A DNA stretch of 63,882 nucleotides, the filler included, from Octopus bimaculoides (taxonomy: Eukaryota): NCBI RefSeq assembly GCF_001194135.2. It is 4 parts of 4 records of this genome, joined end to end, with 100 filler letters (N's around TTAATTAATTAA, not from the genome) between each part and the next. Parts side by side here need not be neighbours in the genome. Positions count along the whole stretch, not along the records: positions 1 to 24,279 come from NC_068992.1; 3 more parts are not named here. The stretch is one strand, 5' to 3'. The translations under genes and the position numbers were made by a program. The notes beneath the pieces are model-generated. The model saw only the letters and a list, made by a program, of their open reading frames with translations. It did no database searches and was not told the origin of the DNA. This document shows positions 2 through 6,164 of this stretch, piece by piece. How positions within the stretch are numbered: position 1 is the stretch's first letter; the number at the start of each line of letters is the position of its first letter.

Positions 2-743
2 TCCAAAGGCGAAACACACAGATATTTAAATAGAGTTTGTTGGACTGAACAAAGACTTATCAACTCGGTGCTACAGGCAGCGGTAGAGCGCAAATGGTCT
101 AAGATAATAACAATCCGTTACTATGACACTGAAGTGAGCCCATTATTTTACGTTCTTTTGATTAAACATGGAATGCAATTGGCTGGAAATATTGTGCTTC
201 CGGAAATAAAGAATGATAAAAACAGTATGCCTACTACGTACTTCCTTGCTGAACTGGTACAAGTTTCAACTATGGGTAGTAAAATAATTTTTTTTTTTGC
301 ACCGAAGTATGTTCAACCCTATGCCTTACGCGAGGCATATATGACTGGCATCTCTTCGTTGCATGGTTTTCAATGGGTGTTATTTGGTGAATATGTCTGG
401 CAATTCCCGTTTGATGATGAAGGTGTATGCAGCGGTGCAGTAAAATGCACACAAGCATTTGCAGGTACAAATTTGATTAGTGAACAATATAATATAAGCG
501 GTTATACTTCATCAGACTGGTTTCGAGTATTCGGTAATTGGTTTGCAGCCGACAAAACTATGTACAAAGGCGGAAGTGTAAGCTACAGATCCAACTATAT
601 TGGTGCAAGAATGGGGCTTGGATACGATGCTGTGCATCTTTATGCAGCCATGCTGGCAAAAATCCTTCGTCAACATCTGACAGCAACCGGTAAACTACAA
701 GCAGATCAATTACGAAATCTAAAGATCCATGGTTTGACTTCTG
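2..743 (+). CDS. Extracellular ANF-receptor / type-1 periplasmic-binding-fold domain of a receptor guanylyl cyclase (partial at both ends, single uninterrupted block)
   Basis: The frame is open from base 2 (SKGETHRYLNRVCWTEQRLINSVLQ...) to the N gap at 744. Motifs YLNRV...W (ERKWSKII), LGYDAVHLYAAML and LRNLKIHGLTSG match the ANF_receptor pattern (R-x-x-p...W-x-x-v, YDAV-x-l-x-A, F-x-GltG). It lies directly upstream of a kinase-homology/cyclase block on the same strand. Confidence 0.8.
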
Positions 744-845
744 NNNNNNNNNNNNNNNNNNNNNNNNNNNNNNNNNNNNNNNNNNNNNNNNNNNNNNNNN
801 NNNNNNNNNNNNNNNNNNNNNNNNNNNNNNNNNNNNNNNNNNNCT

Positions 846-2444
846 GATGATAAAAGGATTATTTCAGACATGGTCAAGTTAACGAAAACTAGACATTGTA
901 ATCTGATCCAATATGGTGGATGCTGTTTGACTTATCCTAATGTCAGCTTGTTCGTGGAAATTGCTGACAAGGGAAGTGTAGCGGATGTACTTGCCAATGA
1001 CACTTTTGAGACTGGATGGGAATTTGGATTTTCATTTTTAAAAGATATATGTTGCGGAATGGAATTTTTGCACGACAATTCTGAAATCAAGACCCATGGA
1101 CGTCTCAAATCTTCAAACTGTTTGGTTGACAAGCGCTGGACTGTACGTCTGTCAGGATTTGGTGCACCGTTTCTTCGTTATGGCAGCTACAGAATCCCAG
1201 ATTCTGAACACTTGTCTAATTTAAAAGATCTTTTTTGGACTGCACCCGAACTACTGAAGGATAACACAAGTCTCGATGGGGTAAAGAGAGGCACACCGCA
1301 AGGAGATGTGTATTCATTTGCTATCATTGCGTGTGAAATTGCGACGAAGGCAAAACCCTACCATTATGAACTGAAACATTTAAGTGAAAAATCCATTTTA
1401 GAACTCATTAAAAATTCGCAGTCACGGGCCAATAAAGATATACGACATGTATGGGAGAGTATTTGTGGACGTAAAATGATTTTTACGAGACCAATTTTAA
1501 GTGACGATTTATTACCAAACAGTAAGCTTTCTAGGAAGCTGTTTAAAAAAATGCTCGAAGAGTCTTGGAATGAGAGAGCATCGTCACGACCGACTTTTAG
1601 TAAGCTTAGCATCATTCTAAATCGAATGCACCCCATTAAAGGAGAGCTCATAGATAGATTAATCCACCGCTTGGAAACTTACTCCAATAATTTAGAAATA
1701 CTCGTAGTAGAAAGAACCAGAGAACTAGAACAAAAAAAAGCTAAGGCTGAGCAATTATTGGGCCAGATGTTGCCACCGAAAGTAGCTTCTGAACTGAAAC
1801 AAGCTGGTAAAGTAATACCGGAATTATTTGAATGTGCCACAGTATTCTTCAGTGATATCGTGAATTTTGGCCGAATATGTAGAGAAAGTAAACCAATGGA
1901 AATAGTTGATTTTTTAAATGAAGTTTATAAAATATTTGACTCTGTTTTAGACGGCTATGATGTTTATAAAGTGGAAACCATCAGCGATTCGTACATGGTA
2001 GTTAGTGGTATTCCAGAAAAGAATGGTGATCGCCATGCAGGAGAAATTGCAACAATGGCTTTAGATCTGATGTCACATGTTACTATACTCCATGTTGACC
2101 CGATGGAAACTGACGTTCTGCAGTTACGAGTGGGTATGCATTCTGGTCCGGTAGTAAGTGGCGTAGTGGGGAAACTAATGCCTAGATTTTGTCTGTTCGG
2201 AGACACAGTCAACACAGCTTCCAGAATGCAGTCTAGTTCTTATGCATTACACATTCAAGTGAGCGAGAGTACTGCAGCAATTCTTGATTCTTTAGGCGGT
2301 TATAAATTAGAATGTAGAGGAAAAAGAGAAGTAAGAGGTCGTGGAGTAATGACAACGTACTGGCTGTGGGGTAAGGACTCATTTATGAAAGAACTACCTG
2401 ATATATCCCTGGCAGTCCCTCTCTCAGAACACAAATTCAAATAA
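846..2444 (+). CDS. Receptor guanylyl cyclase, paralog 1: kinase-homology (pseudokinase) domain + dimerisation coiled coil + class III cyclase domain, 5'-partial, intronless over 1.6 kb
   Basis: The frame is open from the gap edge (DDKRIISDMVKL...) to TAA 2442-2444. KHD motifs: HGRLKSSNC (no HRD Asp), LSGFG (in place of DFG), WTAPELL, GDVYSFAII. Coiled coil: YSNNLEILVVERTRELE...LLGQMLP. Cyclase motifs: TVFFSDI, VYKVETISDSYMVVSG, RVGMHSGPVVSGVVGKLMPRFCLFGDTVNTASRM, with the GTP-specifying Glu and Cys. Confidence 0.95.
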   Translation, partial: DDKRIISDMVKLTKTRHCNLIQYGGCCLTYPNVSLFVEIADKGSVADVLANDTFETGWEFGFSFLKDICCGMEFLHDNSEIKTHGRLKSSNCLVDKRWTVRLSGFGAPFLRYGSYRIPDSEHLSNLKDLFWTAPELLKDNTSLDGVKRGTPQGDVYSFAIIACEIATKAKPYHYELKHLSEKSILELIKNSQSRANKDIRHVWESICGRKMIFTRPILSDDLLPNSKLSRKLFKKMLEESWNERASSRPTFSKLSIILNRMHPIKGELIDRLIHRLETYSNNLEILVVERTRELEQKKAKAEQLLGQMLPPKVASELKQAGKVIPELFECATVFFSDIVNFGRICRESKPMEIVDFLNEVYKIFDSVLDGYDVYKVETISDSYMVVSGIPEKNGDRHAGEIATMALDLMSHVTILHVDPMETDVLQLRVGMHSGPVVSGVVGKLMPRFCLFGDTVNTASRMQSSSYALHIQVSESTAAILDSLGGYKLECRGKREVRGRGVMTTYWLWGKDSFMKELPDISLAVPLSEHKFK

Positions 2445-2546
2445 AGNNNNNNNNNNNNNNNNNNNNNNNNNNNNNNNNNNNNNNNNNNNNNNNNNNNNNN
2501 NNNNNNNNNNNNNNNNNNNNNNNNNNNNNNNNNNNNNNNNNNNNNN

Positions 2547-3281
2547 GAAAGAACAAAAGAACTTGAAAAGAACAAAGCTACAGCAGAACAACTACTTGGC
2601 CAAATGCTTCCAAAGAAAGTAGCGAACGACATAAGAGAAGGAAACAAAATTCTTCCAGAGTATTTTGAAAGTGTCACTGTATTCTTCAGCGATATCGCCA
2701 ATTTCTATATGATATGCAAAGAAAGTAACCCAATCGAGATTGTGAACTTTTTGAATGAGATTTATAATGCATTCGACAAAGTTCTCGATGATTATGATGT
2801 TTATAAAGTAGAAACTATCAGTGACTCATACATGGTGGTGAGTGGTCTCCCAGAGAAGAATGAGAATCGTCATGCGGGAGAGATTGCAACAATGGCTTTA
2901 GATCTGATGTCAATGGTGACCGTGTTTGAAATACCACATATACCAAAATCTACTTTACAATTACGAATTGGAATACATTCAGGACCAGTTGTAAGCGGTG
3001 TGGTTGGTAAACTTATGCCTCGGTATTGTTTGTTCGGAGACACTGTGAACACAGCTTCGAGGATGGAGTCTAGTTGTTACGCTCTGCGAATTCAAGTGAG
3101 TGAGGTTACAGCTGGCATTCTTGAAGAATTAGGGGGATATACTTTGGAATCAAGAGGCCAGATAAATGTGAAAGGGCGAGGGATGATGACAACTTTCTGG
3201 CTTTGGGGAAAAGACACCTTCAAAAAAATGTTGCCGGACCAATCTCTAGCTTTGTCGCTTTCTAAACACAAGTTCAAGTGA
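2547..3281 (+). CDS. Receptor guanylyl cyclase, paralog 2: coiled coil + cyclase domain, 5'-partial, intronless
   Basis: The frame is open from the gap edge (ERTKELEKNKATAEQLLGQMLP...) to TGA 3279-3281. It has the same cyclase motifs and aligns to paralog 1 without indels (69 differences in 244 aa by hand count). Both end in LPDxSLAxxLSxHKFK*. Confidence 0.93.
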   Translation, partial: ERTKELEKNKATAEQLLGQMLPKKVANDIREGNKILPEYFESVTVFFSDIANFYMICKESNPIEIVNFLNEIYNAFDKVLDDYDVYKVETISDSYMVVSGLPEKNENRHAGEIATMALDLMSMVTVFEIPHIPKSTLQLRIGIHSGPVVSGVVGKLMPRYCLFGDTVNTASRMESSCYALRIQVSEVTAGILEELGGYTLESRGQINVKGRGMMTTFWLWGKDTFKKMLPDQSLALSLSKHKFK

Positions 3282-3317
3282 GAAAATTATTTCGATGTTA
3301 ATAATATGAATCTTGAG

Positions 3318-3500
3318 GATGATGATGTCATTGATGATGACGATGCTGCTTGTGGCGTTGGAGTTTATTGAGGATGACGGTGATTATGATAGTAATGATG
3401 GTGATGATGATGATGATGATGATGATAAAAATTACGATTATGATGATGATGATAAAGACGACGGCGACGACGGTTTCTTTGTCATTACCTGTATTAGTGA
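3318..3500. repeat. Degenerate (GAT)n trinucleotide microsatellite 3' of paralog 2
   Basis: Direct reading of gatgatgat runs; this explains the poly-Asp, poly-Met and poly-Ile ORFs at 3313-3618. Confidence 0.9.
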
Positions 3501-3855
3501 TGTTGATGAGAAGGGATATGCATATGCTTCCCAATCTGCAGGGATGATGGGTATCGTTGATCGAATTCATAGAAGTAGTTTGTAACTGGTTTGTCAGTGG
3601 ATCACCTCTGTGCCTCATGAGGGAAATGGAAATTTTGTACTCGGTATGACTAGAAGTGTAGAACTTACAAATTAAATCGATATGACAAAATTGCGCAAGT
3701 CATTTTGTGTGACTCATTATTTCTTCCGAATCCTTGTTATAATAGCAACATCTGAAACACACAGAGCCTCAGCGGCGGCAGCAGCGGCAACAACAACAAC
3801 GACATAAACAACAAGAATATTAATCAGGCAGGATCATTATCTCGCTGTACGAAAG

Positions 3856-3940
3856 GCTTATCGGTATTTCGTTCTGAGTTCAAATTCCGCTGAGGCCCAC
3901 TTTGCCCTTCATCTTTTGAGGGTCTATAAAATAAGCACCA
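3856..3940 (+). mobile_element. tRNA-derived SINE family A, internal fragment
   Basis: ttctgagttcaaattccgctgaggcccactttgcccttcatc matches fuller copies at 8039-8252, 37157-37335 and 54980-55163; contains a B-box-like GAGTTCAAATTCC. Confidence 0.75.
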
Positions 3941-5033
3941 ATCACATGAACATACCCACGGTATATCGATAGATTTGAGAGTTTACGATATATACTCATG
4001 GATGTTTATTGACACACATACATATATACGTATATATGCATATATATATACACACATGCACATATGCGCAGGCACATACATACGCACAGACATACACACG
4101 CTTTCAGAGATCGACTTTGAGAAAGAGTTATTCACTGCGAGGCTGCACTCTTTTTTAATATTCTTGCATCATGAGTTTCTCTCGAATATATACTCAATTC
4201 TTCAAGCTGGATAAGAATGATAGATGACAACTGCATGGCGAAAACGTGGCATAAACTCTCTCGAGATAACGAATTGTCAACAATAGAACTATTGACAAGG
4301 GAAGAAAATATATATAAAGAGAAGAGACCATTCAGGAGTTTGGTAGTAGTTGTTCCTCTTGCGGTTTTTAATTGTTTCCCGAATGAAGAAGGAACATGAT
4401 ATCATCAGAATCAATATAGCACCCGAATATCAAAATTTACCTCGGAGAGGGAACTAAAACTAAAACTAAGGTAATCAAAGGAATTTTCGATTTATAATTG
4501 ATTTTGAACCTATATAAACTTAAAACAGAAAATTTGTCTCTCTGTTTTTCTGCCTTCTGATTGAGTTGAGAAAGATAAATATTTAATTTAAATGAATTTA
4601 AATGAAGTAGTAATTTTCCCTTTTAAGAACAAAAAAATAAAGTTGAAAATGTCAGTTTCGGTGGCGACAATGTTATGAAGTGCAGGCGGCCTGACCTCTT
4701 ATTTCAAAAATGAAATCATAATAATCTATTACCACTCACTCGATCAGTGGTTAGGGATAACTAGTACTTCAAAGCCACATTTACTACTTGATTTCTTTTT
4801 CTTAACGGGAAAATTACTATGCTTTCTTTTTAATCTGCAGTTGTATTGCAAAAATTTTGGATTATGTTTCTTCCCTGTGCTGTCGGATGGCTTGAAATAA
4901 ACTCACGGAAGGGAGTCTTTGTCTGTTTTTTTTTGTCCTTTGAGATTAAGATGATAAAGATTACTATTTTAAATAAAGAAGTATTTTTTTCCTTTCCCGC
5001 CGCGCATCGACATTTTCAACTTGGAGAGATTGT

Positions 5034-5060
5034 AACCCAAGGGATCACGGGTACATCTAG

Positions 5061-5061
<1 letters not shown>
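5034..5061 (+). mobile_element. Helitron-like 3' terminus (decayed hairpin + CTAG followed by T)
   Basis: aacccaagggatcacgggt (imperfect ACCCGTG..CACGGGT stem), then acatCTAG|T at 5057-5061. Confidence 0.45.
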
Positions 5062-5064
<3 letters not shown>

Positions 5065-5136
<72 letters not shown>

Positions 5137-5143
5137 TGTGTGT
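5065..5143. repeat. (TG)n microsatellite
   Basis: Direct reading. Confidence 0.95.
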
Positions 5144-5586
5144 GCAAAGAAAGAAAGTGAGAATGAAAGACCTGTAATCTTTTTTCCTAACCAAAATTGT
5201 GACTGTGTTACTTTATTACCGGTCACCGGAGAAACAGAACTCACCACATGCATGTCTATACATATAAATTTGACATGGGTGATTCTTTCTTATTTTGGGA
5301 TTCATGGTCAAACGGCTGGGTGGAATGGCGCGAAAAATTACACAGATGTGTAGAATCATCCGGTGCTGTTGATTGGCTTTGTATTATTTTTTTTCATAGC
5401 GCCCACGGTTACCGAAATAATCTACTACAATACTACTCTTGTGTTGATGAATGAGAAAGGAATGGGTGATGTCATACTTGGTAGTGGGATGATGAAAAGT
5501 GTACGCTGAAAAAATAAATCAGCGTTTCAATTCTGTGTGAATATATGTGTGTGTATGTAAAAGGGGGGTACGTTGTGTGTGCATGC

Positions 5587-5669
<83 letters not shown>

Positions 5670-6164
5670 TGTGTGTACGTGTCTGCGTGTGCGCTTGGAA
5701 TGGAAGTAGGATTTTGTGTGAAGTCTTTCTATGTAGTGTTTCAGTTATTTGGTTTTCAGTTTCAGATTTTTTTTTTTCTTTTGGTTTTTATATTTTGTGT
5801 AATATTTCGCATTGAGGTTGAGCTACTTAATGTTTGCAGCTATTATTATTTTTTTGCTGTTTTGTTTTTTTGACCTTTGAAAATTTAAAAGATTTTTGAC
5901 CTATTTATTATTTCTTCTAATTTTTGTTTTATCTTTTATGTTTGTTTGTTGCTTTGCAGTTTAAGTTTTGCATCTTTGTTCGCTTATTATTTGGGTTTAT
6001 CTTTTGATTTGGTTGAATCTTTGTTGGTTTTTCTTCTGTTGGTCAGTTATGTTTAGCGTTTTCACTGAAGAAAGTCATTCTATAATTGTTTTTTTAACGT
6101 AAGCGTACCCAAACAAGTCGAATGCTTACACAGAGCAGATTTTACAGCCACATCATACAAACGG

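What the first reader, a model, noticed from the sequence alone, without database searches (positions are those of the whole stretch)
2..3281. Intronless, tandemly duplicated receptor guanylyl cyclase genes: candidate lineage-specific receptor cluster
Seen: 742 bp of ectodomain, 1599 bp of pseudokinase + coiled coil + cyclase, and 735 bp of a second cyclase are each one uninterrupted ORF. The two cyclase regions are about 72% identical with no indels or stops, so they are long-separated paralogs under constraint rather than haplotypes. Paralog 2 runs without a gap into SINE-bearing genomic DNA, so it is not a stray cDNA. Established: animal receptor GCs (NPR1/NPR2, GUCY2C-G types) normally have about 20 exons with many introns in these domains; expanded receptor GC families serve sensory roles (nematode gcy genes, rodent GC-D/GC-G). 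Inference: a retrocopied or intron-lost receptor GC founded a tandem array with divergent ectodomains, possibly an undescribed sensory or peptide-receptor family in this cephalopod-like genome. Contig breaks inside coding sequence would be expected if further near-identical copies were collapsed.
Basis: partly seen in the sequence, partly recalled or inferred. Interest (0 to 1): 0.75.

Follow-up and report, generated by a model that had tools for sequence, protein, structure and literature searches.

The report
Single-exon octopus receptor guanylyl cyclases, misjoined
The window holds one very long, intron-free octopus receptor guanylyl cyclase gene, broken by assembly gaps. A fragment of a sister gene was wrongly put into one of those gaps, so the "tandem duplication" seen here is an artefact, although the intron-free, clustered cephalopod gene family behind it is real.

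Summary
The three open reading frames are there as described: 2-743, 846-2444 and 2547-3281. The two cyclases are 70.5% identical in DNA and 71.8% in protein, with no indels and dN/dS about 0.06.

The window is Octopus bimaculoides chromosome CM046612.1. An unplaced 1,888-bp contig of the same assembly (LGKD02117532.1) overlaps the end of piece 1 by exactly 49 bp and the start of piece 3 by exactly 49 bp. Joining them gives one uninterrupted ORF of at least 1,088 codons. Contigs from other DNA and RNA runs confirm both joins.

So the ectodomain belongs with the second cyclase (gene A). The 1.6-kb middle piece is a fragment of a paralog (gene B) placed between two 100-N gaps. The tandem pair in this window is therefore a scaffolding artefact.

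The wider inference holds:
- **Family:** gene A belongs to a rare family of giant receptor guanylyl cyclases of about 1,620-1,840 aa.
- **Intron loss:** every cephalopod member examined is a single exon, while the limpet and mussel relatives have introns.
- **Clusters:** in Argonauta hians the genes lie in clusters of three and two.
- **Expression:** genes A, B and the gene B copy B' are in only one of the RNA runs found for this species. The tissue could not be identified.

Function (a ligand-gated cGMP receptor, perhaps in the male germline) is inferred.

The parts
2..743 (+). Gene A, middle of the ectodomain. This is a Venus-flytrap (ANF_receptor type) ligand-binding domain. It is a 743-bp contig, with a 1,399-N gap upstream and a 100-N join downstream.
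   Evidence: The frame is open with 0 stops. ANF_receptor scores 17.9 bits alone and 26.1 bits, above the Pfam cut-off, once joined to L002. The last 49 nt are identical to the first 49 nt of LGKD02117532.1. Contigs from runs X2, X6, X11, X15 and X16 continue past 743 with that contig's sequence.
744..843 (.). 100-N scaffold join. It is not a true adjacency. About 1.79 kb of gene A (the unique part of LGKD02117532.1) belongs here.
844..2446 (+). Misplaced 1,603-bp contig, a fragment of paralog gene B. It holds the kinase-homology domain (about 855-1607), the coiled coil (about 1608-1820), the cyclase domain (about 1821-2366), the stop at 2442-2444 and 2 nt of 3' UTR. Its true position and orientation are unknown.
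   Evidence: Pfam domains are. In every run the sequence before 844 is ...AAAAAGATTAATAGTAGGACAATTCCTC (KKINSRTIPP, the juxtamembrane part of a B-type gene, as in P0020), not an ectodomain. It is 71-76% identical to Argonauta genes g2 and g3 and groups with them.
2447..2546 (.). 100-N scaffold join. It is not a true adjacency.
   Evidence: Piece 2 ends with a stop codon, and piece 3 starts in the middle of a coiled coil.
2547..3281 (+). Gene A 3' end: the end of the coiled coil, the cyclase catalytic domain (about 2658-3203), a short tail and the stop at 3279-3281.
   Evidence: Guanylate_cyc scores 7.9e-64. The first 49 nt are identical to the last 49 nt of LGKD02117532.1. Loose ends before 2547 in X2, X15, X16 and X18, and a 1,232-nt RNA contig in X25, match that contig. 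The catalytic motifs are kept.
3282..3422 (+). Gene A 3' UTR, at least this far. It runs into a (TGA)n microsatellite at 3369-3453.
   Evidence: An RNA contig of X11 covers 3164-3422. X11 depth is 0 at 3485-3752, where DNA runs have single-copy depth.

Best explanation
Shown: the window comes from Octopus bimaculoides chromosome CM046612.1. It contains one receptor guanylyl cyclase gene (gene A) with no intron in any sequenced part.

Gene A starts about 1.96 kb upstream of the window with a signal peptide. It then runs through a 1,399-N gap, window 2-743, about 1.79 kb that the assembly left on the unplaced contig LGKD02117532.1, and window 2547-3281.

The 1,603-bp piece at 844-2446 is a fragment of a different, long-diverged paralog (gene B). 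Inferred: the chromosome-scale scaffolding put it between the two halves of gene A. The apparent tandem pair is therefore an artefact.

Shown: both genes belong to a rare family of giant receptor guanylyl cyclases of about 1,620-1,840 aa. The domain order is signal peptide, about 500 aa of tandem beta-sandwich domains, a Venus-flytrap ligand-binding domain, about three EGF-like repeats, one membrane span, a kinase-homology domain, a coiled coil, and a class III cyclase. Every cephalopod member examined is a single exon. The limpet and mussel relatives have introns.

Inferred: one ancient retroposition or wholesale intron loss in the cephalopod stem was followed by local duplications. Those duplications gave types A, B and C, then the recent near-identical pairs A/A' and B/B'. 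The near-identical pairs broke the short-read assembly inside coding sequence.

Inferred mechanism: an extracellular ligand binds the fast-evolving ectodomain of a dimer. The signal passes through the pseudokinase and coiled coil, and the cyclase, which keeps every catalytic motif checked, makes cGMP. Expression is confined to one tissue. My best guess for that tissue, not shown, is testis or sperm.
For: - **Source.** One search gives GCA_001194135.2, CM046612.1.
- **Bridge contig.** L002 (LGKD02117532.1, 1,888 bp) overlaps window 695-743 and window 2547-2595 by exactly 49 nt each. The merged sequence is one ORF of 1,088 codons ending at the stop at 3279-3281.
- **Domains of the merged protein.** Pfam finds ANF_receptor, EGF-like repeats, the kinase-homology domain and the cyclase in order.
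- **Independent support for the joins.**
  - Loose ends after 743 and before 2547 match L002 in the runs listed for parts 2-743 and 2547-3281. These cover this species (X2, X6 and, after 743 only, the RNA run X11) and related species (X15, X16, X18).
  - A 1,232-nt RNA contig (X25) crosses the L002-to-piece-3 join.
  - Both junctions align without indels to full-length homologs.
- **N-terminus.** An ORF at L001 7174-7732 starts with a signal-peptide-like sequence and is 46.7% identical to Argonauta g2 residues 2-131. The gap leaves room for about 472 aa, against 412-414 aa in homologs.
- **Family.** A full phmmer scan of 1.84 billion representative proteins with piece 1 finds only 13 hits. Most are 1,620-1,840 aa, and piece 1 aligns at about residues 545-845. 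The named ones are from Argonauta hians, Sinanodonta woodiana and Strigamia maritima.
- **Single exons in cephalopods.** Gene length equals three times (residues + 1), or one tblastn match covers the whole protein, for seven genes. These are three genes in L004, two in L006 and one each in L005 and L007.
- **Introns outside cephalopods.** Lottia has at least 10 exons. The Sinanodonta gene spans 185 kb.
- **Orthology.** In a neighbour-joining tree gene A pairs with Argonauta g1, and B/B' pair with g2/g3. In Argonauta, g1 lies head to head with g2.
- **Extra copies.** Two sequence variants at 1344-1535 each have single-copy depth in four runs. Contigs at 1708-2075 and 2779-3193 have about twice single-copy depth. 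The variant matches P0020.
- **Constraint.** dN/dS between A and B is about 0.06. The motifs FFSDI, ETISDSYM, CLFGDTVNTASRM and HGRLKSSNC are kept.
- **Expression.** X11 covers the coding sequence at depth 60-430 and has none at 3485-3752. Other RNA runs of the species lack it.
Against: - **A/A' ambiguity.** Because near-identical copies exist (A/A'), the merged gene A could mix pieces of two copies. The exact 49-nt overlaps show that the contigs are neighbours in the assembly graph. They do not prove one physical molecule in this individual.
- **Hidden sequence.** The 1,399-N gap hides about 1.2-1.4 kb, so an intron there is not excluded.
- **Position of gene B.** Its true position was not determined. 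It may well lie next to gene A, in which case a cluster exists here after all.
- **Cause of the 100-N joins.** That they come from Hi-C scaffolding rests on my memory of how this assembly was built.
- **No retroposition hallmarks.** No poly(A) remnant is seen after the stop.
- **Untested points.** Tissue and ligand are unknown. The organism behind ENA sample ERZ21867824 is unknown.
- **Tree quality.** The tree is a simple neighbour-joining tree without support values.
Confidence: 0.85

Rival explanations
1. The window holds two adjacent genes in the same orientation. Gene 1 is the ectodomain (2-743) plus the kinase-homology domain and cyclase (846-2444). Gene 2 is represented by the second cyclase (2547-3281).
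For: The order of the pieces in the deposited chromosome. In Argonauta, A-type and B-type genes really are neighbours, so a cluster in this region is plausible.
Against: - Piece 1 and piece 3 are linked by an unplaced contig with exact 49-nt overlaps into one ORF.
- In contigs from six DNA or RNA runs across four species labels, the sequence after 743 is that contig's, not piece 2's upstream sequence.
- The sequence before 844 in all runs is a B-type juxtamembrane region.
- About 330 residues (end of the ligand-binding domain, EGF repeats, membrane span) would be missing between pieces 1 and 2.
Confidence: 0.04
2. The intron-free pieces are not genomic. They would be cDNA or transcript contamination, or dead processed pseudogenes that the assembler picked up.
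For: Contigs end inside coding sequence. The pieces are short, and there are no introns.
Against: - DNA runs from several individuals carry the pieces at one to two times single-copy depth.
- Piece 3 continues into DNA that is absent from RNA.
- Related species carry colinear DNA contigs.
- A gap-free Argonauta locus has complete single-exon genes set in genomic DNA.
- dN/dS of about 0.06, intact frames and abundant RNA argue against pseudogenes.
Confidence: 0.02
3. The two cyclases, or the B and B' variants, are diverged haplotypes of one locus rather than paralogs.
For: Two variants appear at 1344-1535 in every run.
Against: - A and B differ at 29.5% of nucleotides with saturated synonymous sites.
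- A and B each have their own ortholog in Argonauta.
- B and B' each sit at full single-copy depth in runs from different individuals (X1, X2, X3, X6), which fits fixed paralogs rather than alleles.
Confidence: 0.03

Closest known systems
Animal receptor (membrane) guanylyl cyclases: NPR1/NPR2, GUCY2 types, and the sea urchin sperm resact/speract receptor. NCBI names the product of contig LGKD02117532.1 'resact receptor, partial'.
   Same: The core is the same: an ANF_receptor-type ligand-binding domain, one membrane span, a kinase-homology domain with HGRLKSSNC in place of the catalytic loop, a coiled coil, and a class III cyclase with the Glu and Cys of guanylyl cyclases and the metal, Asn and Arg residues. 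Identity to vertebrate NPR2 and GC-G is about 40-42% over the intracellular part.
   Different: - About 600 more residues.
- An N-terminal block of about 500 aa of tandem beta-sandwich domains with no Pfam match.
- About three EGF-like repeats between the ligand-binding domain and the membrane.
- A single-exon gene instead of many exons.
- The ligand-binding domain is so diverged that only 13 representative proteins match it.
Argonauta hians 'atrial natriuretic peptide receptor 1-like' proteins GAB1605938.1, GAB1605939.1 and GAB1605771.1
   Same: Same family and architecture, also single-exon. GAB1605938.1 (g1) is the likely ortholog of gene A. GAB1605939.1 (g2) and its neighbour g3 are the likely orthologs of gene B. 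The genes lie in clusters of three and two.
   Different: Identity is 41% in the ligand-binding domain and 79% in the cyclase. The recent duplications (g2/g3 against B/B') appear to be independent in each lineage.
Lottia gigantea LOTGIDRAFT_123262 and Sinanodonta woodiana KAL3862181.1
   Same: These are the closest non-cephalopod relatives. The Lottia protein is sister to the cephalopod clade in the tree and 49-52% identical over the intracellular part. The Sinanodonta protein shares the N-terminal block, ligand-binding domain, EGF repeats and kinase-homology domain.
   Different: Both are multi-exon. Lottia has at least 10 exons over about 10 kb. The Sinanodonta gene spans 185 kb.
Expanded sensory receptor guanylyl cyclase families: nematode gcy genes, rodent GC-D and GC-G
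   Same: Lineage-specific duplication of receptor cyclases with fast-evolving ectodomains and restricted expression. This comparison rests on established knowledge, not on a test here.
   Different: The copy number is small here (about 4-6 in Octopus). No evidence places these genes in sensory tissue. The gene structure and ectodomain architecture differ.

Membership tests
Receptor guanylyl cyclase (membrane GC) | Extracellular ANF_receptor / periplasmic-binding-protein type I ligand-binding domain | tested here: met
   PF01094 scores 26.1 bits against a cut-off of 25.4 on the merged gene A. The profile also hits Venus-flytrap domains of T1R, mGluR and GABA-B receptors and of NPR-C and NPR-A in the PDB.
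Receptor guanylyl cyclase (membrane GC) | Single membrane span between the ectodomain and the kinase-homology domain | tested here: met
   There is a hydrophobic stretch ILLTSGLIFLVACFFIYFF in the L002 part of gene A, between the EGF repeats and the kinase-homology domain. I read it by eye and ran no topology predictor.
Receptor guanylyl cyclase (membrane GC) | Kinase-homology (pseudokinase) domain lacking the HRD catalytic Asp | tested here: met
   PK_Tyr_Ser-Thr scores 3.8e-24 (gene B) and 4.3e-31 (gene A). Both have HGRLKSSNC where kinases have HRDLKxxN.
Receptor guanylyl cyclase (membrane GC) | Class III cyclase domain with metal-binding Asp residues, the guanine-specifying Glu and Cys, and the Asn and Arg | tested here: met
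   Guanylate_cyc scores 4.8e-60 and 7.9e-64. FFSDI, ETISDSYM and CLFGDTVNTASRM match the NPR2 motifs YFSDI, ETIGDAYM and CLFGDTVNTASRM.
Receptor guanylyl cyclase (membrane GC) | Ligand-stimulated cGMP synthesis | not testable with these tools
   This needs an enzyme assay.
Tandem gene array in this window | Two or more paralogous genes physically adjacent on one DNA molecule | tested here: not met
   In this window the adjacency is produced by a misplaced contig. It is met in Argonauta hians, with three genes in 24.9 kb and two genes in 12.3 kb.
Retrogene (retroposed gene copy) | No introns, where close relatives have them at conserved positions | tested here: met
   Seven cephalopod genes are single-exon. 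Lottia has at least 10 exons and the Sinanodonta gene spans 185 kb.
Retrogene (retroposed gene copy) | Poly(A) remnant and target-site duplications at the insertion | tested here: not met
   No A-rich tract follows the stop at 3279-3281 or the RNA-covered 3' UTR. Decay is expected, because the event predates the split into types A, B and C.
Retrogene (retroposed gene copy) | A multi-exon parent gene still present in the same genome | not tested
   No tool searches the octopus genome itself.

The most novel reading that the evidence does not exclude
Cephalopods replaced a multi-exon ancestral gene with a retroposed, single-exon giant receptor guanylyl cyclase. It then diversified in local clusters and is expressed in a single tissue. 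In this reading that tissue is the male germline, and types A and B are sperm receptors for egg-derived or oviduct-derived attractants. They would be the cephalopod counterpart of the sea urchin resact/speract receptor. Their beta-sandwich and Venus-flytrap ectodomain would evolve fast under sexual selection.
Probability: 0.25. Interest if true: 0.7.

Novelty: new variant of a known kind. Interest (0 to 1): 0.5.

Why it matters
- **Assembly correction.** This corrects a specific error in the reference octopus chromosome. Gene A is split, 1.79 kb of it sits on an unplaced contig, and a paralog fragment occupies its place. Gene models here are therefore truncated or chimeric (a 524-aa call, a 225-aa call, and 'resact receptor, partial').
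- **Gene structure and evolution.** A 5-kb single-exon receptor gene family in a lineage whose relatives keep many introns is a clear case of ancient retroposition or wholesale intron loss. It was followed by duplication under constraint.
- **Unusual receptor.** The ectodomain (about 500 aa of beta-sandwich domains, a Venus-flytrap domain and EGF repeats) is unusual for receptor guanylyl cyclases. I found no paper describing it.
- **A testable candidate.** With single-tissue expression and a fast-evolving ligand-binding domain, the family is a concrete candidate for a cGMP-coupled receptor of an unknown cephalopod ligand.

Tried and rejected
- **Word-indexed protein searches.** Searches with the merged ectodomain and with an N-terminal family alignment returned only one protein each. 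That index misses this family. The full phmmer scan was what found it.
- **Laying reads on loci.** I confirmed the joins from loose ends on the window instead.
- **2026 raw DNA runs.** X23 and X24 are sampled too thinly, and mostly give partial matches, to say anything.
- **Tissue of the positive RNA run.** It could not be decoded.
  - I considered that 'organism B' might be Octopus maya testis data.
  - The text and supplements of that paper mention no guanylyl cyclase, so this stays a guess.
- **Literature.** Searches for octopus or cephalopod guanylyl cyclases, resact receptor, intronless or single-exon receptor cyclases and sperm chemotaxis found nothing relevant. The 2015 genome paper is not held.
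- **Readings rejected.** I rejected haplotypes, cDNA contamination and a paralog inserted inside gene A. The reasons are given under rival explanations.


Full report
**1. What is in the sequence**

Frame 2 is open from 2 to 743. The frame from 846 is open to a TAA at 2442-2444. The frame from 2547 is open to a TGA at 3279-3281. The other frames of each piece carry 16-56 stops.

Pfam gives a weak ANF_receptor match for piece 1. It gives a kinase-homology domain plus Guanylate_cyc (4.8e-60) for piece 2, and Guanylate_cyc (7.9e-64) for piece 3.

The last 245 codons of piece 2 align to piece 3 end to end with no indel. Identity is 70.5% in DNA and 71.8% in protein. Differences concentrate at third codon positions (53%, against 20% and 16%). 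dN is 0.20, dS is saturated, and dN/dS is about 0.06.

**2. Where it comes from, and the gaps**

The window is Octopus bimaculoides assembly GCA_001194135.2, chromosome CM046612.1.

The region has two kinds of gap. Some have odd, estimated lengths (1,399 N just upstream of the window, then 366, 148 and 611 N further on). Two are exactly 100 N, at 744-843 and 2447-2546. From memory, 100-N gaps are what the later chromosome-scale scaffolding of this assembly inserts between older scaffolds. I could not check that.

On this reading, 844-2446 is a free-standing 1,603-bp contig dropped between two larger scaffolds.

**3. The decisive result**

One homolog of piece 2 is P0043, which NCBI calls 'resact receptor, partial [Octopus bimaculoides]'. 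It sits on an unplaced 1,888-bp contig of the same assembly, LGKD02117532.1 (L002).

- The first 49 nt of that contig are identical to window 695-743.
- Its last 49 nt are identical to window 2547-2595.
- Piece 1, L002 and piece 3 together form one uninterrupted ORF of 1,088 codons ending at the stop at 3279-3281.

Pfam reads the merged protein in order as ANF_receptor (now above the Pfam cut-off), EGF-like repeats, a kinase-homology domain and a cyclase. A hydrophobic membrane span, read by eye, lies between the EGF repeats and the kinase-homology domain.

Equal overlaps of 49 nt at both ends are what contigs cut at forks of a de Bruijn graph look like. That is my inference.

Independent data agree.
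- Contigs from X2, X6 and X11 (this species) and from X15 and X16 (related species) continue past 743 with the L002 sequence, ACCTTGAACTTGATAAGAATGGAAACCG...
- Contigs from X2, X15, X16 and X18 arrive at 2547 with the L002 sequence, TATTCTAGTAGTTTAGAAGTTGTTGTTATT.
- A 1,232-nt RNA contig (X25) of a related species crosses the L002-to-piece-3 join.
- In every run the sequence before 844 encodes KKINSRTIPP, the juxtamembrane region of a B-type gene, as in P0020.
- Both junctions align without indels to full-length homologs.

So the ectodomain belongs with the second cyclase (gene A). Piece 2 is a fragment of another gene (gene B), sitting where L002 should be. The tandem duplication as drawn in the window is a scaffolding artefact.

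**4. The whole gene**

Upstream of the 1,399-N gap, an ORF at L001 7174-7732 begins with a signal-peptide-like MKHLRLLFILFNFLPSNNG. It is 46.7% identical to the N-terminus of the Argonauta homologs.

The gap leaves room for about 472 residues, and homologs have 412-414 there. Gene A is therefore about 1,740 codons long, with no intron in any sequenced part.

**5. The family**

A full phmmer scan of 1.84 billion representative proteins with piece 1 finds only 13 hits. Most are proteins of 1,620-1,840 aa in which piece 1 aligns at about residues 545-845.

The named ones are three Argonauta hians proteins ('atrial natriuretic peptide receptor 1-like'), a Sinanodonta woodiana protein and Strigamia maritima T1JDE2. 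Three more come from ENA records; at least two of these are from assembly ERZ21867824, whose organism is unknown.

The first 500 or so residues have no Pfam or PDB sequence match. An AlphaFold2 model (mean pLDDT 77.5, pTM 0.68) is almost all beta strand. Foldseek matches it to multi-domain beta-sandwich proteins such as nucleoporin gp210, alpha-2-macroglobulin and complement MG domains, S-layer proteins and filamin. Overall TM-scores are low, as expected for beads on a string.

The architecture is signal peptide, about four beta-sandwich domains, a Venus-flytrap domain, about three EGF-like repeats, a membrane span, a kinase-homology domain, a coiled coil and a cyclase.

**6. Intron status and clustering**

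Every cephalopod gene examined is one exon. Either the gene length equals three times (residues + 1), or a single tblastn match covers the full length.

| Locus | Source | Genes |
|---|---|---|
| L004 | Argonauta hians, 24.9 kb, no Ns | three: 967-5970 (-), about 9890-14860 (+), about 18526-23505 (+) |
| L006 | Argonauta hians, another chromosome | two in tandem: 10001-15046, and an uncalled copy at 17325-22319 |
| L005, L007 | ENA assembly ERZ21867824 | one each |

DNA contigs of three related octopus species are colinear with pieces 2 and 3.

Outside cephalopods the relatives have introns. The closest named one, Lottia LOTGIDRAFT_123262, has at least 10 exons over the kinase-homology to cyclase region. 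The Sinanodonta gene spans 185 kb.

A neighbour-joining tree puts Lottia as sister to a cephalopod clade. It pairs gene A with Argonauta g1, and B/B' with g2/g3. The A/B split therefore predates the Octopus-Argonauta divergence.

In Argonauta the A-type and B-type genes are head-to-head neighbours. Gene B may well lie close to gene A in Octopus too, which would also explain why Hi-C scaffolding pulled its contig here. That last point is inference.

**7. Copy number in Octopus**

- The contig covering 1-371 has single-copy depth in four runs.
- Contigs at 1708-2075 and 2779-3193 have about 1.6-2.4 times that depth.
- At 1344-1535 two variants, differing at 8 positions, each have single-copy depth in four runs (X1, X2, X3, X6).
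- The variant matches P0020 (A0A0L8GP06), a B' gene about 96% identical to B.
- At 80% likeness or above, depth is 2-5 times single copy. There is also a B-like copy with internal deletions that is absent from RNA.

The family is therefore at least A, A', B and B' plus a decayed copy.

**8. Selection and activity**

Genes A and B keep FFSDI, ETISDSYM, CLFGDTVNTASRM and HGRLKSSNC, the motifs of active receptor guanylyl cyclases.

Against the Argonauta ortholog, identity is 41% in the ligand-binding domain, 57% in the kinase-homology domain and 79% in the cyclase.

Against a closely related species, I counted nonsynonymous and synonymous codon changes.

| Region | Nonsynonymous : synonymous codons | Rough dN/dS |
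|---|---|---|
| Ectodomain | 20 : 8 | about 0.8 |
| Cyclase | 5 : 9 | about 0.2 |

Synonymous divergence is similar in the two regions. The counts are small and the lists may be incomplete.

**9. Expression**

Run X11 (RNA, 2015) covers all three pieces at contig depth 60-430. Its depth is zero at 3485-3752, where DNA runs have single-copy depth, so it is real RNA. Genes A, B and B' are all present in it.

No other RNA run of the species listed by the index holds these sequences, and two 2026 runs gave no reads on them. RNA runs of two other species labels (organisms B and E) also hold them. Tissue labels are hidden from me.

Testis or sperm is my best guess, for two reasons from general knowledge: retrogenes are often testis-expressed, and receptor guanylyl cyclases are sperm chemoattractant receptors in echinoderms. 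It is not shown.

**10. Verdict**

The intron-free, lineage-specific, locally duplicated family is real and apparently undescribed in the papers I could search. The arrangement in this window, however, is an assembly artefact, and the expansion is modest.

It is a new variant of a known kind, the receptor guanylyl cyclase, distinguished by its gene structure and its ectodomain.

Noticed in passing
L004 967-5970 (-), Argonauta hians BAAFZT010000048.1: The annotated protein GAB1605938.1 (1,001 aa) is truncated. The frame stays open for 677 more codons upstream and includes a signal-peptide-like start. The real product is about 1,667 aa on a single exon.
   Followed up: yes
L006 17325-22319 (+), Argonauta hians BAAFZT010000045.1: An uncalled second C-type receptor cyclase gene lies 2.3 kb downstream of GAB1605771.1. 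It is 65% identical to that protein over 1,678 aa in one tblastn match.
   Followed up: partly
P0126, P0134 and P0123 (C-type and another family branch): These members have degenerate catalytic motifs. Examples are RYTLFGDTMLIAATM, RYTLFGETMQIAATM and RFCVLGKTIDIALKM in place of RYCLFGDTVNTASRM. They may be inactive as homodimers or act as pseudo-cyclases. Types A and B keep the motif.
   Followed up: no
window 846-1874, as seen in run X6: A 1,051-nt DNA contig is about 85% identical to gene B, with internal deletions (skips 1235-1363 and 1486-1874). It is absent from RNA run X11, so it is probably a decayed family copy.
   Followed up: no
window 664-665: In X2 and X11 a contig matches gene A up to 664 and then diverges (ATCGGACATCAAGTGACAGCGACCGGAGAA against CTTCGTCAACATCTGACAGCAACCGGTAAA). 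It is an expressed A-like copy with a mosaic of identical and diverged segments, which would fit gene conversion.
   Followed up: no
window 1079-1505: B and B' differ mostly by amino-acid-changing substitutions in the kinase-homology domain loops (16 nonsynonymous against 4 synonymous codons). That is unusual for such recent copies.
   Followed up: partly
window 3369-3453 and 3753-4000: A (TGA)n microsatellite lies in the 3' UTR. Just downstream is a high-copy repeat (SINE-like by eye; depth about 10,000 in DNA runs against about 16 for single copy).
   Followed up: partly
window 16260-17795 (-) and 19326-19610 (+): There are mobile-element remnants. One is a Gag-like ORF with a weak zinc-knuckle match on the minus strand. 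The other is a piggyBac-type transposase fragment (DDE_Tnp_1_7, 2.4e-07).
   Followed up: partly
window 5065-5144, 5574-5691, 9537-9902, 10429-10576, 11770-12380: Long (TG)n tracts are present at 5065-5144 and 5574-5691. By the ORF translations alone (not checked with a repeat finder), the three further assembly gaps appear to be flanked by simple dinucleotide and tetranucleotide repeats.
   Followed up: no
ENA assembly ERZ21867824 (L005, L007): An assembly filed among ENA metagenome records carries two full-length family genes on contigs of 98 kb and 144 kb. It looks like an unlabelled cephalopod genome; the organism was not identified.
   Followed up: no
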